Below the pieces are notes generated by a model, which saw only the letters and a program-made list of their open reading frames with translations, did not search any database and was not told the DNA's origin. A DNA stretch of 64,000 bases from Octopus bimaculoides (lineage: Eukaryota). Numbering within the stretch: position 1 is the first letter of the stretch; each line of letters starts with the position of its first letter. Below, piece by piece: positions 13,901 to 64,000 of this stretch. Both the position numbers and the translations under genes were made by a program. The stretch is taken from contig NC_069007.1 in NCBI RefSeq assembly GCF_001194135.2, positions 22,135,724-22,199,723 of the forward strand. The letters run 5' to 3'.

Positions 13901-16900
13901 CTTTTCTTTCAAACTGGGTTCTGACACCAACCTTACAATATCATTCTAAAAGTAAACAATCATATCATCACAATTTTGAAACTGCAAGATAAAAGGGTAA
14001 AGACCCCACTTTTGGTCATGAATGACCATGGCATTGCACCTAGAAAGTTCCCCTCTGAGGCACGAGTTTGGACAAAATTGTTGATGAAAGACCAGCAGTT
14101 GCCCATGCTAAGTTACTGGAACATAAACACACCAACACTGGCTGTTAAGCAGTGGTAAAGGCTTGAGCACACACACACACACGACAAGCTTCTTTCAGTT
14201 TCTGTCTACCAAATCCACCCACAAGGCTACAGTATAAGATACTTGCCCAAGGTGCCAAGCAGTGAGACTGAACCTGGAATGATGTGCTTGGGAAGCAAGT
14301 TTCTTTCCACACAGCCATGCCTGTGTCTGTTATTATTCTTATTGATTTCTCAAAAACTGAATGTTATTTTTGTAATTAACATGCAGAAAATTAAGAAAAG
14401 CTATTAAGTACATTGAATTCAATGTATTGATGGACAGATAGAGATAAGGTTGTTTGGTTTGTGGTTACAGATTAGAGAAAGCAAACAGGTGACAAGCGTT
14501 GGGCCAGGATTGATAACTTGTGTTACAAATAATATTGTGAAAGTCGTACAGAGAGATTAAATAAAGTAAAATGAATAGAATAAGAAAACAACAAGAATAA
14601 ACAAAGAAAAGGTGAAGGTAAAGGGGAGAAAGATAAATAGAAAGGAGAAATAGAGAGCAGCAAGAGGGATTGGAGAGGGAGGGAAGTATATAGAGTGGTA
14701 GGATGAGTGAGAGGAAAGAAAAGTGTATGATAAATTATAGGAGGGTGAGTAAACATTATTATCTGCAGGTCAATAGTTCAAATGTAGGTAGGTGTTTGAA
14801 TTGAAATTTGATATGTTGAAAAGAAGCTGTTTTGGTGTGCGTGTGTACGTGTGTGTGTACGTGTGCATGCGTGCATGCATGCATTAATGCACCTGTTTCT
14901 GTCTTTATTCTTTGAGTTCTACATGAAGTGTCTTTTTTTTTATATATATCCAAAGTTGCTTATCAACATGGGTTTAAAAATATTACATTATAAATATAAA
15001 TACACATATTGATATAAATAGAAACAAATATGGTATTTCTCTTCTGTCTTTGTTGTCAAAATCCATGTCATTGGTCCCTGTAACTTAGCAGTTTGGCAAA
15101 AACACTCTGATGGAATAAGTACCAAACTTAAAAAAAAACGTCCTGGGCTGATTCATTTGACTCCAAATTCTTCAAAGCGGTGTTCCATCTTTCCTTTCCT
15201 CACGTGGTCATCTATCTTTTCATTCGGTCTGTCACACAGTCCAGACGCATTCTTATCTGTCTCCTTTCCTATCTTTTCTCTTATCAAAGAATCTTCTTCC
15301 AGAGTTTGCTACCTTACCTTGCTCGTCCTGGCCAAACGGCCCTCCCTCTTTGTTCTCGTTTCATTTGGTTTGTTGTATGTCCTGTTTCTGTTACCAACTT
15401 TGACCCTCCGTAAATCCCAAATTTTATTTTGGTTCGCAGGAGCAACTGAAAGAAGCCTGTCGTATATATATATATATATATTTATATATATCAACTCTAG
15501 CCTTGTGAGTGGATTTTGTAGTTTGTTAGATGGAAACTGAAAGAAACCCAGAATATATAATGTATATATCTATGTGTGTGTGTCTTTGTGTCTGTGTGTG
15601 TCTCCTCACCACTGCTTAACAACTGGTGTTGGTGTGTTTATGTCTCTGTAACTTAGCGGTTCAGCAGAAGAGGTCGACAGAATAAGTACTAGGCTTAAAA
15701 ACAAAGATAAGTCCTGAGGTTGATTTGTTTGACTAAAACCCTTCAAGGTAGTGCCCCGGCATGGCCACAGTCGAATGGCTGAAACAAGTAAAAATAAAAA
15801 AAAAAAGAACAGACAAGAGATAATTTCTATAAATCAAATATTTGTTTATCTTATATGGTATTTAATAGACCTTTACTTGTCTTCTTCTTTGTGCCACTGG
15901 TTAAACATATTTCTGTTGGCTCACATTTGTCCATGGTTTTCACATCCGTTTTTCCCATGACAATATGGATTCAGACAATAATTATTGCTCAAGTATTGTT
16001 CTACAATCAGAAGTGCTTCCTGCTTCTAACCTTTACCTGTTTTTCAAGTTTTCATTACACATATCGAAAGTGTAGAGCTACTGCACGATTTGCTGAGAAG
16101 GGAATTTCAAAAGACAAGTGCAGGTGTGAGCTGTGTGTTTGAGATGCCTGGGGTCAGGCCCACTGTCTGGCACATTGGGCAAGTGTCTTCTACTGTAGCC
16201 CTTGGTCGACCAAAACCATTTGAATGGATATGGTAGACAGAAACTGGAAGAAGACCATTGTGCGTGCGTGTGTGTGTGTGTGTGTGTTGATATCCCATTA
16301 AATGAGTTTCCAATCCTCTGTGAAAACATGTCTGGAAACGGGTGAGGCTTTGTGACATGAATGGCATCTGGCAATAGAAAATCTGCCACAACAAAGATCC
16401 ATATGATCTTTGCAAGGAAAGAAAAGTGGATGTTATAATAAATATGATGATGATGATTATTATTATTTAATATCTGTCTTCCATGGGTTGAATGGTTTAA
16501 TTGGATCGTACGAGTTGTGGGCCTGCATTCTGCTCCAGTATCTGCTTTGGCATGTTTCTGCAGCTGGATGCTTATACTAACGCTTAAAGCAATAGGCTTT
16601 CTTTGGTGGCATTGGCATCAGTGAGGTTGTCTTACAACTCCCAAGACTAAGGGCCGAAAGTGGTTCGGGATGTGATGATTCTAGGCAGGGTGATAAAGGA
16701 GGGTAAGGTATAATAAAAAGAACATGATGGTAGTGGAGAGTAACAAGGTTGACCCTGTTGACCCTGGAGGTGATAAGGAAAGGACAAAAGAGAGAGAGAG
16801 AGAGAGAGAAGGTTAGTGACTAATAGGAAGATGATGAGGTTTTGTGTGCAGGGGATGGTTCCAGAGCTGTCCCACATTTTAAGGGTGAGCATGGATGAAA

Positions 16901-17059
16901 AGTGTGAGGGGAAAGGGAACAAGAAAGGGAGAAATACATGATGGTGGCAAAGACTCCGACATACATACATGTATATACATATGTATATATACACACAGAT
17001 TTACATACAAACACACATAGGCAGGGTTATAAATTATCGCCTCAATTTCTATGTCTGAG

Positions 17060-17240
17060 TGTGTCTATCTGATTATCTATTTGTCCAATCTATCTGCCTG
17101 TCTATCTATCTATCGATCTATCTATCTGTCCAATCTGTCTGTCTATCTATATCTATCTATCTATCTGTGTCTGTCTGTCAGTCTGTTTGTCTGTCCAATC
17201 TATCTATCTCTCTCTCTCTTTCTACCTGTGTGTGTGTGTG
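17060..17240. repeat. Compound (TATC)/(TGTC)/(TC)/(TG) microsatellite
   Basis: Seen directly. Confidence 0.9.
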
Positions 17241-17299
17241 TTTAGCTGGCTATGCTACTATTCGTAATCAAATTTCAGTACGTAGCATGGCACTGAATT

Positions 17300-18390
17300 C
17301 ATTTCCCACTCGCATGGTTCCGGTATCGATCCTACTGTGTCACCCTTCTATTATATCCTGGATCGACGAAAACAACGCGGAAGCCCGTTTGTTATAAATT
17401 TCAACTGTAATTAGACACATCCTTGTCTTATCACACAGTGTGACGTTGAGTCTTCCCGAAGATTACCTTTGTCGCTATAAGTTTCCGTAGAGTACTCAGC
17501 CACTTATACAAAGAATAAGGTAGTTTTATTCACGGAACAACTGGAACTCTCATTTGTCGAAATCGATACGAGATTTCATCATCTGACTACACAAGACAAT
17601 AAAAATAGAGTTGCCATTCTAACTCGCTCCTCGTCCATAATTTCCTATCTGTCTATTATTTCCCATCATTCAAGACACTCCACAAAGCTTATTCTTGTCT
17701 CTACTTTCATTTTCCGCTAATTATTCAATCATCGTTATCATTACGCTAACGATTATTTTATTTATTAAAAAAATATGCTACAACGTCCTCCACCCCCTTT
17801 AATTTTTTTCGGTGTAAANNNNNNNNNNNNNNNNNNNNNNNNNNNNNNNNNNNNNNNNNNNNNNNNNNNNNNNNNNNNNNNNNNNNNNNNNNNNNNNNNN
17901 NNNNNNNNNNNNNNNNNNNNNNNNNNNNNNNNNNNNNNNNNNNNNNNNNNNNNNNNNNNNNNNNNNNNNNNNNNNNNNNNNNNNNNNNNNNNNNNNNNNN
18001 NNNNNNNNNNNNNNNNNNNNNNNNNNNNNNNNNNNNNNNNNNNNNNNNNNNNNNNNNNNNNNNNNNNNNNNNNNNNNNNNNNNNNNNNNNNNNNNNNNNN
18101 NNNNNNNNNNNNNNNNNNNNNNNNNNNNNNNNNNNNNNNNNNNNNNNNNNNNNNNNNNNNNNNNNNNNNNNNNNNNNNNNNNNNNNNNNNNNNNNNNNNN
18201 NNNNNNNNNNNNNNNNNNNNNNNNNNNNNNNNNNNNNNNNNNNNNNNNNNNNNTATCTTTCACTTCAACATCTTCGTTGTTTAACCAGAGCCATTCCGCC
18301 CAACTTTCTACTGTTTCACCTGCAACAAGCGACACTTTTTTTTGTGATACTTTAAACACAAAGCACCTTCCTTCATGATTCCAGGTATTT
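17300..18390 (+). promoter_or_regulatory. Probable CNOT2 promoter / first exon (donor CAG|GTATTT at 18384/18385), partly inside an N gap
   Basis: CpG-retaining zone immediately upstream of the first recognisable CNOT2 exons; the TSS may be hidden by gap 17819-18253. Confidence 0.4.
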
Positions 18391-21300
18391 AAAACATGCT
18401 CCAGGGGGGGGGGCATGCCTCCCTGCTTTTCTTTCTGCTTTTTTCTTTTGTAGTACTTTGCATACTCACACGCACGCATAAATGTAACTATATACATTCT
18501 TACATTATATTTATATTTATCGACATACACATAATCTGTATATTTTTCTGTTTTTTCTTTTACCTATCTTGTATGTATATCGTTCTTTTTTCTTCGCACA
18601 CACACACACACACATCTTTTTGTGGGAGGATGGTGGATCTTGAAGCAAATAAAGCTATATATTGGGTTAAAAACCGCTTTGGATAGAATATATATATATG
18701 TATATATATTTATATATAAATTTATAATCTCGGTTCGTAAATGTTGGCGATTTAGTGTGTGTAATATATTAAATTGTTTATTTCGTTTCGTGTTGCTCTC
18801 TTTGTCGATATTGTTCCTCGCAGTTGTGTGCGTGTGCTTGTTAAATTGTTTGTTGTTTTTCCCCCCTGTATATATGTTCTGTGCCTGTCTCTCGTTTCCC
18901 CTTTAGTGTATGTGTTGTGGTGGTGTTCCTTTTTCTGTGTCTCCCCCAATCTCGTTTCGCTCCACCACCTCCTCCCTGTCTCTGTTCTCTCTCTTTCTCT
19001 TTTTGTGTAGTCGTAGAATGTTCACTTTCGTGCTAACACAATCAACATATTTACTATTTCTTTATGTATACGTATATATATAATACACACGATTCCGCTC
19101 GCATCTCAGTGTGTGTTTTTAATCGGTAAATAGAAATAATCTGGTGTAGTTTAATGATGGTGTTGTTGGTGCTGATGGTGAATTTAATCTATTGAACCTG
19201 AACCGGTGGTGGGTCTTCTTTTCTTTTCTTTCTTTCTATCTTCGTTAGAGCCATTACAATTATCACAGTTATCCGAAACTAAATTATCATTGTAGCTCCT
19301 ATTAAGATTATTGTTATTGATTTTTAATAATAATAGTAAAGTTAGACACGAGACTTTGCAGGAATTTACACGGCGGAAGGGAAATAAATATAAGCTCGTG
19401 TGATATTCACGCCTTTTGCGAGAACATCAGCAACAGAGTGAAACGGAATGCAGACGGGAATCGAACCAGGCTCGTGAAACTTGGTGATGCTCGGCTAATT
19501 GTGAGCGTATTAATTATCCCACTTTAGATTTCAGACCATGTGTCTTATGTATGTATGTATGTAATTTTGTCCAGGCGAAATATTTCTTACATGACTATCA
19601 CACATCACCCTATTTCTTCGCAATTAGGACTTCATTTTTATTTATTTATTTTTTTTAGTCACTATGACATTTTCTCTTTCTGCAATTCTAAACCTCACGT
19701 CCCCATTTTAAATAGTTATTCTCTAAAATTTCAGAAATATTTAATCTTTTCTACACCTCNNNNNNNNNNNNNNNNNNNNNNNNNNNNNNNNNNNNNNNNN
19801 NNNNNNNNNNNNNNNNNNNNNNNNNNNNNNNNNNNNNNNNNNNNNNNNNNNNNNNNNNNNNNNNNNNNNNNNNNNNNNNNNNNNNNNNNNNNNNNNNNNN
19901 NNNNNNNNNNNNNNNNNNNNNNNNNNNNNNNNNNNNNNNNNNNNNNNNNNNNNNNNNNNNNNNNNNNNNNNNNNNNNNNNNNNNNNNNNNNNNNNNNNNN
20001 NNNNNNNNNNNNNNNNNNNNNNNNNNNNNNNNNNNNNNNNNNNNNNNNNNNNNNNNNNNNNNNNNNNNNNNNNNNNNNNNNNNNNNNNNNNNNNNNNNNN
20101 NNNNNNNNGTAGGAAATCGTATTTACTCGAGTAACGACTGGCTGTGAGTTGTTTAGCACCAGGTCAGCTTATGATCGAAGGTATTCTAGCTATGGCAGTC
20201 CGGTTTTTATTTATATAAGATCACAATGTATTCTTCCTTGTCTAAATTATCCAATGTACCGTATTTACTGGTTAAGTCGTACTGTTTTATAGTGAAAACA
20301 AAACAAAAAAACTAGGGCGCAAATATACACGAGGTAACGCTAAAACTATGAAGTGGGGGGGAATTTTGTACTGAGACGTAATACTGAATTAAAGGTGTGA
20401 CTTAATCACGAATAAATATGGTTGTTTTTTTTTTGTTTACTTCGTCGGAGTGTGATTTTAGGGAAATTTGGTTACTATTTCTAGCAGATCGGTCGTCCAC
20501 GTAAAGAGGCTCTTATGCTGGCTCTCGGTCGATGTGGTGAGCTGAGAACGGTTGACGATGTCTGCTCGTTTGTTCTGGATTCACTTCACACAGAAAATCA
20601 TAAAATAAACATTGTCTTTCATTGCTTCTCTGTTCGTTCATAGAAATAAACCTAACAAGATCATGGGATTGATTGTTTATGTGTCCAGTGTGAAATATAA
20701 ATGGCTTTGGGGCTTGCAGGGTTGGGGAACCTTATATTGTTAGGAGTTCGCGTTTTGTGTTCTATACATTGATTAATTAGACCATTGATTAGTAGATCTG
20801 CGTGTATTAACATGGACGGTGCGCGCGCGCACATATATATGTATATATAGTCGTAAAACCAATATAACCACCTGGCTCACTAACGAGGGAGCTAACCCTA
20901 CTGTTGAATGAATAAGAAGTAATATGTTGGGCAAAACAGTCCTAGATACATAATTGATGAGATAGTCATGACTGGAACGCCTCTGATTATAGAGCTGCTC
21001 AGACAAGGTTGACCTGGAGCTAAATAGCATTATCACCAACTATCTTTCCGGTTATCGATTTTTTTTCTTCCCTTTTTACATTTGTTTGTATTTGTTCCCT
21101 TATCCATCTCCATAGTCTTAATCATTCTTATAAATAATCATTGCAACATTTGACTTAGTGTAATCCTGTGTTCATGGAGTTAACACATATGTATTTTGAT
21201 ATCCATTTTACATTCGTACCTTTCATAGTAGCCTTGTTTTTGGTCAACGACTATTCAGAAAAAAGTGCCAAATGAAAGCTAAATGTGAGTTATTACCTGG

Positions 21301-56238: not shown

Positions 56239-59200
56239 TTCATTCGATCGTTCGTACGTACGCACGTTCGTTCGCTCGTTCATTCGTACGTATGTACGTA
56301 CGTTCGTTCGTACGTACGTACGTTAGTTCGTTCGATCTTTCTTTCGTTCGCACGTGCGTACGTTCGTACGTAGGTAGGTACGCACGTTCGTTCGTTCGTA
56401 CGTACGTTCATTCGTTAGTTCGTTCGTTCGAGCGTTCGTTCGATCGTTCCGACGTACGGATGTATGTACGTACGTTCGTTTGGTCATTGATTCGTACGTA
56501 TGTACGTACGCTTGTTCGTTCGCTGCATCATTTCGTACCTTCGTTCGTTCGTTCATACGTACCTATATACGTACGTACGTTCGTTGGTACGTACGTTGTT
56601 TCTTTATTTCTTGCCTACGTAATACGTACGTACGTTCGTTCGTAAGTACGTTCTTTCGTTATTTCCTGCCTACGTACGTACGTTCGTTCGTACGGATATA
56701 TGTATGTTCGTTCGTACTTACGTACGTTCGTTCGTCCATACGTACGTTCGTCCGTACGTAAGTACGTTCTTTCATTATTTCCTGCCTACGTAATACGTAC
56801 GTTCGTTCGCACTATGTACGTTCGTTCGTTCTTTCGTTATTTCTTGCCTATGTAGGTACGTACCTTTGTTCGTTCGTTCGTTCGTTCGTACTTAGGTACG
56901 TTCTTTCGTTATTTCTTGCATGCGTACGTACGTTCGTTCGTACTTACGTTCGTTCGTACTTACGTTCGTTCGTACGTTCGTTCGTTCGTACGTTCAATCG
57001 TTCGTATGTACGTACGTATATATATATACACGTTCGTTCGTACTTACGTACGTACGTTCGTTATTTCATTCGTTCGTACATACGTACGTACGTTTGTTCG
57101 ATCCTTCATACGTACGTACGTACGTAAGTTCGCTCGTTCGTCCGTACGTAAGTACGTTCGTTTGTTCGTACGCACGTTTGTTCGTTCATACGTACGTTCG
57201 TTTTTACGTACGTACGTTCGTTCTTAGGTACGTACGTTCTTTCGTTATTTCCTGACTACGTAATACGTACGATCGTTCGTTCGTTCCTTCGTACGTACGT
57301 TCGTTCGTTCTTTCGTTATTTCATGCCTACGTACGTACGTACGTTCGTTTATTCGATCGTTCGTTTTTTCGTTCGTTCGTTCATTCGTATGTACGTACGA
57401 ACGTACGTTCGTTCGGTCGTTCCTACGTACGTATGTACTACGTTCGTTCGTTCTTACGTACGTACGTTCGTACAAACGTAACTACGTATGTACGTACATT
57501 CGTTCTTTCTTTCGTTCAATCTTACGTACGTACGTACGATCCTTCGTTAATTCGTTGTTCTTACCTACGTAAGTACGTTCGTTCTTACCTACGTAAGTAC
57601 GTTCGTTCTTTAATTCGTTCGACTGTTCGTACGTACGTACGTTCGTTCTTTCTTTCGTTAGTTCGTACGTACGTTCCTTTGGTCGTCGATTCGTACGTAT
57701 GTACGAACGCACATACGTACGTTCATTCGTACCATCGTTCATACGAACGAATGTACGTTCGTTAGTTCGTTCGTGCCTATATACGTACGTACGTTCTTTC
57801 TTTATTTCTTGCCTGTCTACGTACGTACGTACGTTCGTTCGTTCTTTCGTTATTTCCGTCCTGCGTACGTACGTTCGTTCCTTCAACCGTTCGTTCGTAC
57901 TTACGTTCGTTCATATGTACGTACGTTCGTTTGTTCGTTCGTTCGTACGTACGTTCTTTCGTTATTTCCTGCCTACGTAATACGTACGTACGTTCGTTCG
58001 TTCGTTCTTTCATTCGTTCGTACATACGTACGTACGTTCATAGGTACGTACGTAAGTTCGTTCGTTCGTCCATACGTACGTTCTTTCGTTATTTCCTTCC
58101 TGCGTACGTACGTTCGTTCCTTCAATCGTTCGTACGTACGTATATATGTACGTTCGTACTTATCTACGTACGTTCGTTCGTTCGATCGTTCATGCGTACG
58201 TTCGTTCGTTTATACGTACGTACGTTCTTTTGTTATTTTCTGCCTACGAAATACGTACGTACGTACGTTCGTACTTACGTACGTACGTTCGTTCGTACTT
58301 ACGTTCGTGTCTTCGTTCGTACGTACGTTCTTTCGTCAATTCTGTCTTCGTAATATGTACGTACATTCGTTAGTACGTACGTTCTTTCGGTATTTCCTGC
58401 CTATGTACGTACGTTCGTTCGTACGTACTCACGTTCATTCGTTATTTCTTACCTGCGTACGTAAGTTCGTTGAATCGTTCGTATGCACGTAGTATATATG
58501 TATGTAAGTTCGTTCGTTCGTCCGTACGTACGTACGTTCGTTTGTTCATTCCTTCCTACGTACGTTCGTTCGGTCGTAAGTACGTTTATTCGTTTGCTTA
58601 TTCGTACGTACGTACGTTCATTCGTACATATGTTCGTTCGATCGTTCGTTCGTTCGGTCGTTCCGACCTACGTATGTACGTACGTTCACTTGTTCGTTCG
58701 TTCGTACGAACGTAACTACGAACGTTCGTTCGTTCCTTCTTTTATTCATTCGTACGTACGTTCGATCGTTCGTTCTTACTTACGTAAGTACGTTCGTTTT
58801 TTAATTCATTTGATTGTTCGTTCGTACGCTCGTTCGTACTTAGGTACGTTTTTCCGTTATTTCTTGCCTGCGTACGTACGTTCGTTCGTACGTTTGTACG
58901 TTCGTTCCTTCCTACGTATGTTCGTTCGTTCGGTCGTAAGTACGTACGTTTATTCGTTTGTTTGTTTGTTCGTACGTACGTACGTACGTTCTTTCGGTAT
59001 TTCCTGCCTACTTAATACGTACGTACGTTCTTTCGTTATTTCCTGCCTACTTAATACGTACGTACGTTCGTTCGTTCGTTCATTCCTTCGTACGTACGTT
59101 CGTTCGTAATTACGTACGTACGTACGTTTATTTGTACGAACGTACGATCGATAGTTCGTTTTGTACGTATCTCCGTACGTACGTTTGTTCGTTGGTACGT

Positions 59201-62200: not shown

Positions 62201-64000
62201 GTTCGTTCGTACGTTCGTTCCTTCGTACGTACGTTCGTTCGTTCGTTCATACGTACGTTCGTTCTTAGGTACGAACGTTCTTTCGTTAATTCCTGCCTAG
62301 GTAATACGTACGTTCGTTCCATCGTACGTACGTTCGTTCGTNNNNNNNNNNNNNNNNNNNNNNNNNNNNNNNNNNNNNNNNNNNNNNNNNNNNNNNNNNN
62401 NNNNNNNNNNNNNNNNNNNNNNNNNNNNNNNNNNNNNNNNNNNNNNNNNNNNNNNNNNNNNNNNNNNNNNNNNNNNNNNNNNNNNNNNNNNNNNNNNNNN
62501 NNNNNNNNNNNNNNNNNNNNNNNNNNNNNNNNNNNNNNNNNNNNNNNNNNNNNNNNNNNNNNNNNNNNNNNNNNNNNNNNNNNNNNNNNNNNNNNNTACG
62601 TTCGATCGTTCGTTGTTACTTACGTAAGTACGTTCGTTCTTTAATTCGTTCGATTGTTCGTTTGTACGTACGTAAGTTCGTTCCTACGCACGTACGTAAT
62701 TACGTTCCTTTGTTCGTATGTTCTTTCATGCGTACGTTCGTTTCACCGTTCGTTTGTTCGTACGTAAGTTCTTTCTTCCGTACGCAAATACTTTCGTTCG
62801 TTCGTTTGTTCTTTCGTTCCTTCGTACGTAGGTTCGTTTGTTCGTACGTACGCACGTTTGTTCGTTCATAAGTACGTTCGTTCGTTCGTACGTACGCAAG
62901 TTCTATCGTTATTTCCAGCCTACGTAATACGTACGTTCGTTCGTACGTACGTTCCTTCGTTATTTTCTGCCTACGTACGTACGGTCGTTCGTACGTGCAT
63001 TCGTTTGTTCCTTCCTTCGTACGTACGTATGCGCGTACGTTCGATCGTTGGTTCTTTCGTTCGTTCGTGCGGCTGTTGCTACGTACGTATGTACGTACGC
63101 TCGTTCGTACAAACGTAACTACGTACGTACTTCGTTCGTTGATTCGTACGTACGTACGTTCGTTCATCCGGCCGTTGCTACGTACGTATGTACATACGCT
63201 CATTCGTACAAACGTAACTACGTACGTACGTTCGATCGTTCGTTCTTACTGACGTAAGTACGTTCGTTCTTTAATTCCTTCGAGTGTTTGTTCGTACGTA
63301 CGTACGTTCTTTCGCTATTTCTTGACTGCGTAGGTACGTTCGTTCGTACGTACGTTCGTTCTTACGTACGTTCGTTAAAACGTTGGTACGTACGTACGTA
63401 TATATGTGCGATCGTTCGTACTTACGTACGTTCGTTCTTTCATTCGTTCGTACATACTTACGTACGTTCGTTCGATCCTTTATACGTCCGTCCGTACGTA
63501 AGTTCGTTCGTTCGTCCGTACGAACGTAAGTACTTTCGTTCGTTCGTACGATCGTAACTACGTACGTACGTTCTTTCGTTCGTTCGTACGTACGATCGTT
63601 CGTTAATTCGTTCGTTCTTACTTACGTAAGTACGTTCATTCTTTAATTTGTTCGATTGTTCGTTCGTACGTACGTACGTTCGTATGTACGTATTTTCGTT
63701 TGCTCGTTGATTCGTACGTATGTACGTACGCACCTACGTAAGTTCGTTCGTTCGCTCTATCATTTCGTACCTTCGTTCATTCGTACATACCTACGAATGT
63801 ACGTTCGTTACTTCGTTCATACGTACCTATATAGGTACGTTCGTTCGTACGTACGTTGTTTCTTTATTTCTTGCCTACGTAATACGTACGTTCGTAAGTA
63901 CTTCTTTCGTTATTTCCTGCCTATGTACGTACGTATGTTCGTTCTTTCGATCGTACGTACGTTCGTTCGTACGTACGTTCGTTCGTACGTACGTTCTTTC
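56239..64000. repeat. CpG-rich complex satellite (TACG/TTCG tetramers + recurring TTCTTTCGTTATTTCCTGCCTACGTAATACG motif) in a TMTC3 intron
   Basis: Continuous to the window end; near-identical blocks recur at 58655, 59296 and 59941. Confidence 0.95.

What the first reader, a model, noticed from the sequence alone, without database searches (positions are those of the whole stretch)
56239..64000. More than 7.7 kb of CpG-every-4-bp satellite inside a gene body of a CpG-poor genome
The array is built from TACG and TTCG tetramers and starts ~180 nt from the TMTC3 acceptor at 56060. (TACG)n is its own reverse complement and alternates pyrimidine and purine, so blocks can form hairpins, cruciforms and potentially Z-DNA/Z-RNA. 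TTCG spacers are strongly strand-biased (CGAA in the pre-mRNA), giving many CGTAC-GAAC-GTACG mini-stems. This makes it a candidate dense methylation domain, a structured-RNA or ADAR (Z-alpha) ligand, or a chromatin landmark. Function is inference only.
Basis: partly seen in the sequence, partly recalled or inferred. Interest (0 to 1): 0.7.

Follow-up and report, generated by a model that had tools for sequence, protein, structure and literature searches.

The report
CpG-rich tetranucleotide satellite in octopus intron
A real block of at least 7.4 kb of degenerate TTCG/TACG repeats sits in an intron of an Octopus bimaculoides TMTC3-like gene; it looks like ordinary, lineage-specific satellite DNA, unusual mainly because it keeps its CpGs in a CpG-depleted neighbourhood.

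Summary
Positions 56239-64000 are one strand-asymmetric array of TTCG and TACG units. It has 1161 CpGs (o/e 3.35, against 0.34 in the other 56 kb), and 95% of CpG-to-CpG distances are multiples of 4. The array begins 179 nt from the acceptor of a TPR exon that is 98% identical to an Octopus bimaculoides protein.

It is not a pure microsatellite. Pure runs stop at 4-5 units. A 26-nt motif recurs 28 times. About 641-bp and 1182-bp higher-order copies share exact stretches of up to 172 bp. This is a complex satellite grown by slippage and unequal exchange.

The orthologous intron of a relative (exons 82-86% identical) has no array. No Rfam or Pfam family matches.

The functional ideas are weak or untested:
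- Alternating purine/pyrimidine tracts reach only 31 bp, against 149-178 bp in neighbouring TA/TG microsatellites.
- Perfect palindromes reach only 20 bp.
- Predicted RNA helices are 8-16 bp, although folding is more stable than shuffles (z about -4.6).
- Lost CpGs are not mainly TG/CA, which argues against long-term heavy germline methylation.

Gap continuity, copy number, methylation and transcription therefore could not be tested.

The parts
56239..61218 (+). Array block 1 (4980 bp), contiguous without N with the TPR exon. Degenerate TTCG/TACG tetramers with interspersed longer motifs.
   Evidence: TTCG 333, CGAA 17, TACG 350, 15.7 CpG per 100 bp. The nearest gap to the left is at 50950-51116.
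61219..61318 (.). Assembly gap of 100 N inside the array.
   Evidence: The contig after the gap starts with 36 nt that recur at 62881.
61319..62341 (+). Array block 2 (1023 bp), same orientation and composition as block 1.
   Evidence: TTCG 71, CGAA 3, TACG 68, 15.6 CpG per 100 bp. About 1182-bp offset copies of 60715-61200.
62342..62596 (.). Assembly gap of 255 N inside the array.
   Evidence: The contig after the gap starts with a 66-nt exact copy of 61897-61962.
62597..64000 (+). Array block 3 (1404 bp). It runs off the window end, so the true array end is unknown.
   Evidence: TTCG 90, CGAA 2, TACG 96, 15.5 CpG per 100 bp.
58615..60072 (+). Recent higher-order duplication: about three tandem copies of a roughly 641-645-bp segment, with exact shared stretches of 87-172 bp.
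   Evidence: diagonals 58644/59285/59930 with offsets 641 and 645; 172-nt exact repeat between 58615 and 59901. The 28-mer offset histogram peaks at 640 (281) and 1280 (145).
60715..62341 (+). Higher-order copies at an offset of about 1182 bp (this figure depends on the estimated size of gap 1).
   Evidence: 123-nt exact match between 60840 and 62022, and 53-nt match between 60715 and 61898; 60889-61218 against 62071-62341 is 91% identical; the motif order D-F-G-G-H recurs at 57018, 59609 (partial), 60889 and 62071.
56651..56676 (+). Reference copy of the recurrent 26-nt non-tetrameric motif TTCTTTCGTTATTTCCTGCCTACGTA. There are 28 copies with up to 3 mismatches between 56596 and 63927, all on the + strand, at irregular spacing of 39-982 bp.
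   Evidence: 28 matches, against 0 expected in 100 shuffles.
56095..56238 (.). Imperfect (TA)n/(TG)n/(TATG)n microsatellite that joins the unique intron end to the array.
   Evidence: TRF period 2, 72.5 copies, 84% matches; 149-bp alternating purine/pyrimidine run, 56090-56238.
55955..56059 (-). TPR exon 'A' of the TMTC3-like gene ([35 protein letters not shown]). The acceptor is ...tttcttacag| at 56060-56069 and the donor is |gtaagt at 55949-55954.
   Evidence: 98% identity to O. bimaculoides A0A0L8HI56 and 65% to Lingula TMTC3-like. The exon is found at 82% identity in L001.
54739..54822 (-). TPR exon 'B' (YYPNHTKGLILMGDININILKDLNSAEK). The boundaries are approximate.
53201..53413 (-). Last coding exon 'C' ([14 protein letters not shown]...KAKKKPQ, then stop). 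The upstream boundary is approximate.
   Evidence: and 60 (TPR_2 E=2e-8 and TPR_19 E=9e-8 on P0001).

Best explanation
This is a lineage-specific, non-coding, complex satellite in an intron of the Octopus bimaculoides TMTC3-like gene.

Proposed origin and behaviour (inferred):
1. A compound tetranucleotide microsatellite, (TTCG)n plus (TACG)n, grew by replication slippage. It may have started next to the (TA/TG/TATG)n microsatellite that still flanks it.
2. It accumulated point changes and a few longer motifs.
3. It was then enlarged in blocks of about 0.64 and 1.2 kb by unequal crossing-over or replication-template switching. That gives the higher-order structure seen today.
4. It is transcribed passively as part of the pre-mRNA, where it reads as CGAA/CGUA, and is removed with the intron.
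5. Its CpGs survive in a CpG-depleted neighbourhood because the array is young and continually re-amplified, because it is little methylated in the germ line, or both. Selection for a CpG-dependent function is not needed to explain this.

What is shown: the anatomy, the strand bias, the higher-order copies, the absence from an orthologous intron, the lack of any RNA or protein family match, and the mutation pattern. Neutrality, the germ-line methylation state and transcription are also inferred, not shown.
For: - Period-4 structure far beyond shuffles.
- Degenerate, not pure: runs reach at most 4-5 units, and about 37% of units lack CpG.
- A 26-nt motif occurs 28 times, all in one orientation. 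A conserved order of eight longer motifs recurs.
- The 28-mer offset histogram peaks at 640, 1280 and 1180 bp, with exact shared stretches up to 172 bp. Aligned higher-order copies are 85-94% identical, while the array as a whole is about 71-75% self-similar. This means older units with recent block duplications, the usual signature of unequal exchange.
- No other copy exists in the remaining 56 kb of the window. Other tandem repeats there are at most 166 bp.
- The orthologous intron of a relative (L001) has no tandem array and at most 9 CpG per kb in the 9.2 kb upstream of exon A. Its exons A, B and C are 82-86% identical and its CpG o/e is 0.31.
- No Rfam family reaches its gathering score. 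The best is 46 bits against a threshold of 90, for repeat-like miRNA families. There are no tRNAs. Pfam finds nothing on the longest array ORF.
- Mutation pattern: of 521 in-phase lost CpGs, only 36% are TG or CA; CT 109 and CC 67 are as common. Between higher-order copies, 22 of 141 mismatches are CpG-transition type and 50 are A/T unit swaps. TG and CA o/e are 0.34 and 0.49 in the array, against 1.30 and 1.26 in the flanks.
- Context from papers: simple repeats make up 8.66% of the O. bimaculoides assembly, about 2.3 million loci (PMC6279123, Table S11). So the genome is prone to such repeats.
Against: - A 7.4-kb CpG-dense array is about 85 times the mean simple-repeat length in this genome (202.5 Mb over 2.31 million loci). 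TTCG and TACG are not among the ten most abundant simple repeats listed for O. minor. So this is not a run-of-the-mill microsatellite.
- Gene bodies are the main methylation target in this species, and satellites are reported as relatively more methylated than transposons (PMC9476566). The array could therefore be methylated in the soma.
- The mutation-spectrum argument is weakened because amplified variants are counted several times and because alignments of low-complexity sequence are ambiguous.
- Neutrality is a default, not a result.
- The identity of the relative L001 is unknown. It may be distant enough that absence there only shows non-conservation at that depth.
Confidence: 0.72

Rival explanations
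1. Dense 5mC domain or chromatin landmark. The array is a block of about 1200 methylated CpGs (or, conversely, an unmethylated CpG-island-like block) inside a methylated gene body. It recruits methyl-CpG or CXXC readers and affects elongation, splicing of the adjacent exon, or local chromatin.
For: - CpG density is 15.7 per 100 bp, and the array lies 179 nt from an acceptor.
- The flanks carry the classical deamination signature: CG 0.34, TG 1.30, CA 1.26. So the neighbourhood has probably been methylated in the germ line.
- In O. bimaculoides, methylated CpGs concentrate in introns and exons of a subset of genes. Satellites show relatively higher methylation than transposons (PMC9476566).
Against: - Lost CpGs are not dominated by TG/CA: 36% of 521. 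CpG-type transitions are 22 of 141 differences between recent copies. TG and CA are under-represented in the array. None of this is expected of long-term heavy germ-line methylation.
- The array is absent from the orthologous intron of a relative, so any function is not conserved at that depth.
- No methylation data could be read here.
Confidence: 0.12
2. Structured intronic RNA. The (CGUA)n blocks of the pre-mRNA pair with each other to form dsRNA or Z-RNA, which serves as an ADAR (or other dsRNA-binding protein) ligand in a heavily editing species.
For: - Array windows fold more stably than dinucleotide shuffles. Mean z is -4.6 over 11 windows in transcript sense, against -0.6 in 10 flank windows.
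- (TACG)n is self-complementary: 100 perfect palindromes of 12-20 bp.
Against: - The longest uninterrupted helices are only 8-16 bp in the transcript sense, against about 9 bp in shuffles. Pure (TACG)n runs reach at most 16 bp.
- CGAA units have no partner on the same strand: TTCGTTCG 157 against CGAACGAA 1.
- The longest alternating purine/pyrimidine tract is 31 bp, against 149-178 bp for neighbouring TA/TG microsatellites.
- No Rfam family matches, and the array is not conserved in the relative.
- Transcription and editing could not be checked.
Confidence: 0.05
3. Assembly artefact. The repeat exists in the genome, but its length, internal order or placement in this intron results from collapse, mis-joining through the 144-bp TA/TG microsatellite, or mis-scaffolding of a short-read assembly.
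For: - The window has ten N gaps, two of them inside the array.
- Both contig starts after those gaps duplicate sequence elsewhere in the array.
- Between 10% (k=51) and 17% (k=31) of array k-mer positions are non-unique.
- The join to unique sequence runs through a low-complexity microsatellite.
- The public gene model for this locus is truncated to the last three exons (P0001, 129 aa).
Against: - 4980 bp of array are in one gap-free contig with the exon.
- 90% of 51-mers and 96% of 101-mers are unique within the array, so it can be assembled.
- All three blocks share orientation and composition.
- The flanking microsatellite is imperfect and therefore partly unique.
Confidence: 0.08
4. Mobile-element derivative or cryptic promoter. 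The array is the expanded tail or internal repeat of a transposon, or a CpG-island-like alternative promoter that gives a short C-terminal TPR transcript (the 129-aa model).
For: - One-orientation motifs of 20-40 nt recur in the array.
- The only public model starts at a Met in the exon just downstream.
- Mollusc satellites are often linked to mobile elements (general knowledge).
Against: - There is no reverse transcriptase, transposase or other Pfam domain on array ORFs. There is no tRNA-like head and no terminal repeats or target-site duplication at the one visible boundary.
- Exon A has a canonical acceptor, and the residues before its Met are conserved in relatives ([11 protein letters not shown] in L001). 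So it is an internal exon, and the short model is most simply a truncation caused by the repeat and the gaps.
Confidence: 0.03

Closest known systems
Simple-sequence repeats of classes (AACG)n, i.e. TTCG/CGAA, and (ACGT)n, i.e. TACG, as catalogued by RepeatMasker/TRF/MSDB
   Same: The basic units and 4-bp phase are the same. (ACGT)n is its own reverse complement (PMC5533116). Short compound TACG/TTCG, TTCG/TGCG and similar arrays occur in other eukaryotic contigs.
   Different: The examples found elsewhere are 100-420 bp and lie in genomes without CpG depletion (flank o/e 0.85-1.3). This one is at least 7.4 kb, has pure runs of only 4-5 units or fewer, carries longer interspersed motifs and 0.64-1.2-kb higher-order copies, and sits in sequence with CpG o/e of 0.34.
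Satellite DNA with higher-order repeats evolved from a short simple unit, for example human satellites 2/3 derived from (ATTCC)n (own knowledge, not tested here)
   Same: It is a degenerate short-unit array overlaid by longer higher-order copies. It is strand-asymmetric, contains CpG, and is amplified by unequal exchange.
   Different: Classical examples are megabase-scale and pericentromeric. This is a single array of at least 7.4 kb inside an intron. Its genome-wide copy number and chromosomal position are unknown.
Methylated CpG-rich mollusc satellites, for example SSUsat of Spisula subtruncata (PMC5537241, seen), and the 'satellite' class reported as relatively methylated in O. bimaculoides (PMC9476566)
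   Same: It is a tandem repeat in a mollusc genome with mosaic methylation, and it has many CpGs.
   Different: No methylation data exist for this array, and its sequence does not show the decay expected of long-term germ-line methylation. No sequence relationship was tested.
Vertebrate-type CpG island
   Same: CpG o/e is far above background over several kb in a CpG-depleted region.
   Different: G+C is only 38-42%. The CpGs come from a 4-bp tandem unit, not from a unique promoter sequence. The array is intronic, there is no evidence of a transcription start, and the organism has mosaic gene-body methylation rather than global methylation (PMC9476566).

Membership tests
Microsatellite / simple sequence repeat | Head-to-tail copies of a 1-6-bp unit | tested here: met
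   TRF reports period 4 with more than 1200 copies. 95% of CpG spacings are multiples of 4, against 28% in shuffles.
Microsatellite / simple sequence repeat | Short (tens to hundreds of bp), largely pure array of one unit | tested here: not met
   The array is at least 7.4 kb with about 68% matches and two units in equal amounts. Pure runs reach only 4-5 units. Longer motifs are interspersed.
Satellite DNA with higher-order repeat structure | Kilobase-scale tandem array, non-coding | tested here: met
Satellite DNA with higher-order repeat structure | Blocks of several basic units repeated as larger units that are more similar to each other than the basic units are | tested here: met
   Offset peaks at 640, 1280 and 1180 bp, with exact stretches up to 172 bp. 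Copies are 85-94% identical, against a background of 71-75%.
Satellite DNA with higher-order repeat structure | Many arrays or high copy number in the genome, often at defined chromosomal sites | not testable with these tools
There is no second copy in the other 56 kb of the window.
CpG island | CpG o/e above 0.6 over more than 200-500 bp | tested here: met
   O/e is 3.35 over 7.4 kb.
CpG island | G+C above 50-55%, unmethylated, associated with a promoter | tested here: not met
   G+C is 0.38-0.42. The array is intronic and next to an internal exon with a canonical acceptor. Methylation state is not testable here.
Z-DNA / cruciform-forming tract | Long uninterrupted alternating purine-pyrimidine run, or a long perfect inverted repeat | tested here: not met
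   The longest alternating run is 31 bp, and only 5 runs are 24 bp or more. TA/TG microsatellites in the same window reach 149-178 bp. Perfect palindromes reach only 20 bp.
Long dsRNA substrate for promiscuous ADAR editing | Extended, nearly perfect intramolecular duplex (tens of bp or more) | tested here: inconclusive
   MFE z is -4.6 against shuffles, but the longest uninterrupted helix is 8-16 bp in transcript sense. Editing itself is not testable here.
Any curated RNA family (Rfam 15) | Score at or above the family's gathering threshold | tested here: not met
   The best hit is mir-297, 46 bits against a threshold of 90, and it lies in the TA/TG microsatellite. Array hits score 31 bits or less against thresholds of 55-101.
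TMTC3 (host gene) | C-terminal TPR repeats with closest named relatives annotated as TMTC3 | tested here: met
   TPR_2 and TPR_19 pass their cut-offs. There is 65% identity to Lingula 'transmembrane and TPR repeat-containing protein 3-like'. The N-terminal transmembrane/PMT-like part lies outside the window and was not examined.

The most novel reading that the evidence does not exclude
The array is a germ-line-unmethylated, CpG-island-like block that interrupts a methylated gene body. It would be maintained because it binds CpG readers and sets a methylation or chromatin boundary, or a cryptic start, just upstream of the last three TPR exons. That would be a repeat-built CpG island in an invertebrate with mosaic methylation. 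The evidence does not exclude this: CpGs are retained without TG/CA accumulation, the flanks show deamination, and the only public gene model starts right after the array.
Probability: 0.05. Interest if true: 0.7.

Novelty: new member of a known kind. Interest (0 to 1): 0.22.

Why it matters
In practice the array matters mostly as an annotation hazard. It and its gaps probably truncated the public TMTC3-like gene model to 129 residues. It would also attract multi-mapping reads in bisulfite, RNA-seq and editing analyses of this octopus.

Biologically it is a convenient natural probe. About 1200 CpGs in one intron of a gene whose neighbourhood shows deamination decay could show whether octopus gene-body methylation spreads over tandem repeats, and how fast CpG-rich repeats turn over. 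If the array proved conserved, or sharply differentially methylated, it would bear on how mosaic invertebrate methylomes treat repeats. The present evidence does not point that way.

Tried and rejected
There was no test of gap continuity, depth or copy number, RNA coverage, or editing.
2. Same-species contigs: an exact look-up of the O. bimaculoides protein P0001 found no contig. No O. bimaculoides ORF-type hit appeared, so this genome seems absent from the contig collection.
3. Array ORF as a genome-wide proxy: a 276-aa array ORF gave only weak hits of at most 50% identity. These are FVRS/YVRT-type ORFs from short NNCG microsatellites of unrelated eukaryotes. This says nothing about array frequency in octopus.
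4. Metagenome scan with the commonest array 20-mer: 14 contigs, with arrays of at most 340 bp. This shows the unit class exists elsewhere, but only in small arrays.
5. Single clean higher-order period: self-BLAST shows everything matching everything at 71-75%. Only exact 28-mer diagonals revealed the local 641- and 1182-bp copies.
6. Literature: six searches found no description of a TTCG/TACG satellite in cephalopods. One hit for 'octopus' was the variant caller of that name. Albertin 2015 was not held under the id tried. The O. minor supplement lists only the top ten simple repeats, none with CpG.
7. Rfam, tRNA and Pfam scans of the array found nothing meaningful.
8. Transposon origin was rejected for lack of any coding domain or terminal structure.

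Full report
**What is there.** Positions 56239-64000 are a single tandem array that differs sharply from the rest of the window.
- TRF reports period 4 (consensus TTCG, about 68% matches) across all three sequenced blocks, plus overlapping compound periods of 20-32 bp.
- The array holds 1161 CpGs in 7405 read bases. CpG o/e is 3.35, against 0.34 for positions 1-56238.
- 63% of successive CpGs are exactly 4 nt apart, and nearly all others are 8, 12 or 16 apart. In block 1, 95.4% of spacings are multiples of 4, against a mean of 28% (maximum 33%) in 100 dinucleotide-preserving shuffles.
- The two bases between neighbouring CpGs are TT 321 times and TA 318 times out of 731. So TTCG and TACG are equally common.
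- The array is strongly strand-asymmetric. TTCGTTCG occurs 157 times and CGAACGAA once. T is 40% and A is 16%. AT skew is -0.38 to -0.45.
- No second array and none of these 8-mers, apart from one CGAACGAA, occur in the other 56 kb. The longest other tandem repeat there is 166 bp.

**Where it is.**
- On the minus strand...tttcttacag|CTTGAAGAC... opens a 105-nt exon (55955-56059) that ends ...TTAATG|gtaagt.
- With two downstream exons it encodes a TPR protein tail that is 98% identical to Octopus bimaculoides A0A0L8HI56 and 65% identical to Lingula 'TMTC3-like'. TPR_2 and TPR_19 pass Pfam's cut-offs.
- So the window is O. bimaculoides, or a very close relative. The gene runs right to left. The array lies in the intron upstream of the third-from-last coding exon.
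- The array starts 179 nt from the acceptor, behind 35 nt of unique sequence and a 144-bp imperfect TA/TG/TATG microsatellite.
- In the pre-mRNA the array reads as CGAA/CGUA.
- The public model is only 129 residues and begins at a Met in that exon. The residues before the Met are conserved in relatives. The model is therefore most simply a truncation caused by the repeat and its gaps.

**Gaps.** The scan's program asked for continuity across 61219-61318 and 62342-62596 to be tested first.
- Indirect evidence: the three blocks have the same orientation, unit mix and CpG density of 15.5-15.7 per 100 bp.
- Block 1 (4980 bp) is in one gap-free contig with the exon.
- 90% of 51-mers and 96% of 101-mers are unique within the array, so a short-read assembly of it is believable.
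- However, the first bases after each gap (61319 and 62597) are exact copies of sequence elsewhere in the array: 36 nt at 62881 and 66 nt at 61897. The assembler therefore broke at internal repeats. Block order, gap sizes and total length are unverified, and the array also runs off the window.
- Reading frame is not an issue because the sequence is intronic and non-coding.

**Anatomy beyond the tetramer.** This is not a pure microsatellite.
- Pure (TACG)n runs reach 4 units at most and (TTCG)n runs 5. About 37% of units lack a CpG.
- A 26-nt motif, TTCTTTCGTTATTTCCTGCCTACGTA, occurs 28 times with up to 3 mismatches. All copies are on the + strand, at irregular spacing of 39-982 bp, against none expected by chance.
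- Seven further 18-42-nt motifs recur in a loosely conserved order: D-F-G-G-H ... A ... (E)-B-C.
- Whole-array self-alignment is a blur at 71-75% identity. Exact 28-mer diagonals show clear higher-order periods, with offsets peaking at 640, 1280 and 1180 bp.
- There are about three 641-645-bp copies between 58.6 and 60.1 kb, sharing exact stretches of 87-172 nt. Copies at an offset of about 1182 bp lie between 60.7 and 62.3 kb. Aligned copies are 85-94% identical.
- Old degenerate short units overlaid by recent block duplications is the textbook picture of a satellite that grows by slippage and unequal exchange.

**Conservation.** Two loci carrying the orthologous gene tail were retrieved.
- In L001 (an unidentified ENA assembly with GC 31% and CpG o/e 0.31), exons A, B and C are 82-86% identical to the window's.
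- The 9.2 kb upstream of exon A in L001 contains at most 9 CpG per kb and no tandem array.
- L002 is more distant (CpG o/e 0.8) and also lacks an array.
- The array is therefore lineage-specific at that depth. Closer Octopus species could not be examined.

**Does the class exist elsewhere?**
- A 276-aa ORF read through the array found only weak protein hits of at most 50% identity. These are FVRS/FIHS/YVRT-type ORFs.
- The loci behind three of them hold 100-420-bp NNCG-type microsatellites in genomes without CpG depletion.
- The commonest array 20-mer occurs 10 times here but in only 14 of 241 million metagenome records. There it lies in arrays of at most 340 bp.
- So the unit class is known and widespread in small doses. 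A multi-kilobase version was not seen elsewhere, but no animal genome collection was searchable.
- Simple repeats are 8.66% of the O. bimaculoides assembly: about 2.3 million loci and 202.5 Mb, for a mean near 88 bp. Satellites are 0.54%. The ten most abundant simple repeats listed for O. minor contain no CpG unit (PMC6279123, Tables S11 and S13).
- Six literature searches found no description of this satellite.

- Z-DNA and cruciforms: the longest alternating purine/pyrimidine run in the array is 31 bp, and it owes much to a TATATA insert. Only 5 runs reach 24 bp. Ordinary TA/TG microsatellites in the same window reach 149 and 178 bp. Perfect palindromes reach only 20 bp. The array is thus less Z-prone or cruciform-prone than its mundane neighbours.
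- RNA structure: 300-nt array windows fold more stably than dinucleotide shuffles. Mean z is -4.6 in transcript sense and -6.2 on the + strand, against -0.6 for ten flank windows. So the self-complementarity is real. The longest uninterrupted helices are only 8-16 bp in transcript sense, against about 9 bp in shuffles. CGAA units have no partner on the same strand.
- RNA families: no Rfam family comes near its gathering score. The sub-threshold hits are to repeat-like miRNA families. There are no tRNAs and no Pfam domain on the array ORF.

**Testing the methylation idea from sequence.**
- The flanks carry the classical deamination signature: CG 0.34, TG 1.30, CA 1.26. In the array, TG is 0.34 and CA is 0.49.
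- At 521 in-phase positions where a CpG has been lost, TG plus CA make up 36%. CT (109) and CC (67) are as frequent.
- Between recent higher-order copies, 22 of 141 mismatches are CpG-transition type and 50 are A/T swaps, which turn TACG into TTCG or the reverse. By my estimate that is about 2.6 times the non-CpG transition rate. This is well short of what heavy methylation produces (own knowledge).
- Caveats: amplified variants are counted repeatedly, and alignments of such sequence are ambiguous.
- Published work says that under 10% of CpGs are methylated in this species. Those CpGs concentrate in introns and exons of about 14,000 genes. Transposons are largely unmethylated, and satellites are relatively more methylated (PMC9476566).
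- Taken together, somatic methylation of the array is possible. Long-term heavy germ-line methylation is not what the sequence suggests. Youth or re-amplification of the array, or low germ-line methylation, explains CpG retention without invoking function.

**Verdict.** The best explanation is an ordinary, lineage-specific intronic satellite derived from a compound tetranucleotide repeat (confidence about 0.7). The functional readings (methylation domain, ADAR or Z ligand, chromatin landmark) are either weakened by the tests that could be run or remain untested. It is a new member of a known kind and of modest interest. Its main practical effect is on assembly and annotation. A small residual chance remains that it acts as a repeat-built CpG-island-like element in a mosaic methylome.

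Noticed in passing
window 46176-46406 (+): This ORF segment matches the Pfam NOT2/NOT3/NOT5 C-terminal domain (E=7e-19). It is probably an exon of a CNOT2/3-like gene on the + strand, lying about 7 kb beyond the 3' end of the TMTC3-like gene and convergent with it.
   Followed up: partly
window 55955-53201 (-); protein P0001: The public O. bimaculoides model A0A0L8HI56 is only 129 aa. It covers the last three exons and starts at an internal Met. Residues before that Met are conserved in relatives. The model looks truncated by the array and its gaps.
   Followed up: partly
window 61319 and 62597 (first bases after the two array gaps): Both contig starts are exact copies of sequence elsewhere in the array (36 nt at 62881 and 66 nt at 61897). 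The assembler broke at internal repeats.
   Followed up: yes
window 50827-50927 and 51117-51227, flanking the gap 50950-51116: The same 45-53-bp TA/TG-rich unit (…TGTGTGTATTGACACATACTATATA…) lies on both sides of an assembly gap. Another gap (47531-47540) abuts a 166-bp (TA)n. Gaps in this window tend to sit in tandem repeats.
   Followed up: no
window 1-56090: Away from the array, CpG o/e is 0.34 with TG 1.30 and CA 1.26 across genic and apparently intergenic sequence alike. 4-kb bins give 0.20-0.46, apart from 16001-20000 at 0.71. This is a strong deamination signature for a species reported to methylate under 10% of CpGs (PMC9476566).
   Followed up: partly
window 56095-56238: The microsatellite abutting the array contains (TATG)n stretches. 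TATG is the C-to-T product of TACG, and (TATG)n is among the ten most abundant simple repeats in O. minor. A link between TATG and TACG arrays is possible but was not examined.
   Followed up: no
window 56106-56174 (+) and scattered array positions: There are sub-threshold Rfam hits to repeat-like miRNA families (mir-297 at 46 bits against a threshold of 90, also mir-3149, mir-1277 and mir-278). These reflect low-complexity hairpins, not genes.
   Followed up: yes
L001 9232-10270: In the unidentified relative, the introns between the last three exons are about 440 and 240 bp, against about 1.1 and 1.3 kb in the window.
   Followed up: no
L003 5141-5500 and 10141-10420: An unrelated eukaryotic contig carries two near-identical copies, 5 kb apart, of a poly-A tract followed by (CATA)n, then (CATTCGTA)n, then (TTCGTGCG)n. 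An RVT_1 ORF lies nearby. This looks like a retroelement-associated NNCG microsatellite.
   Followed up: no
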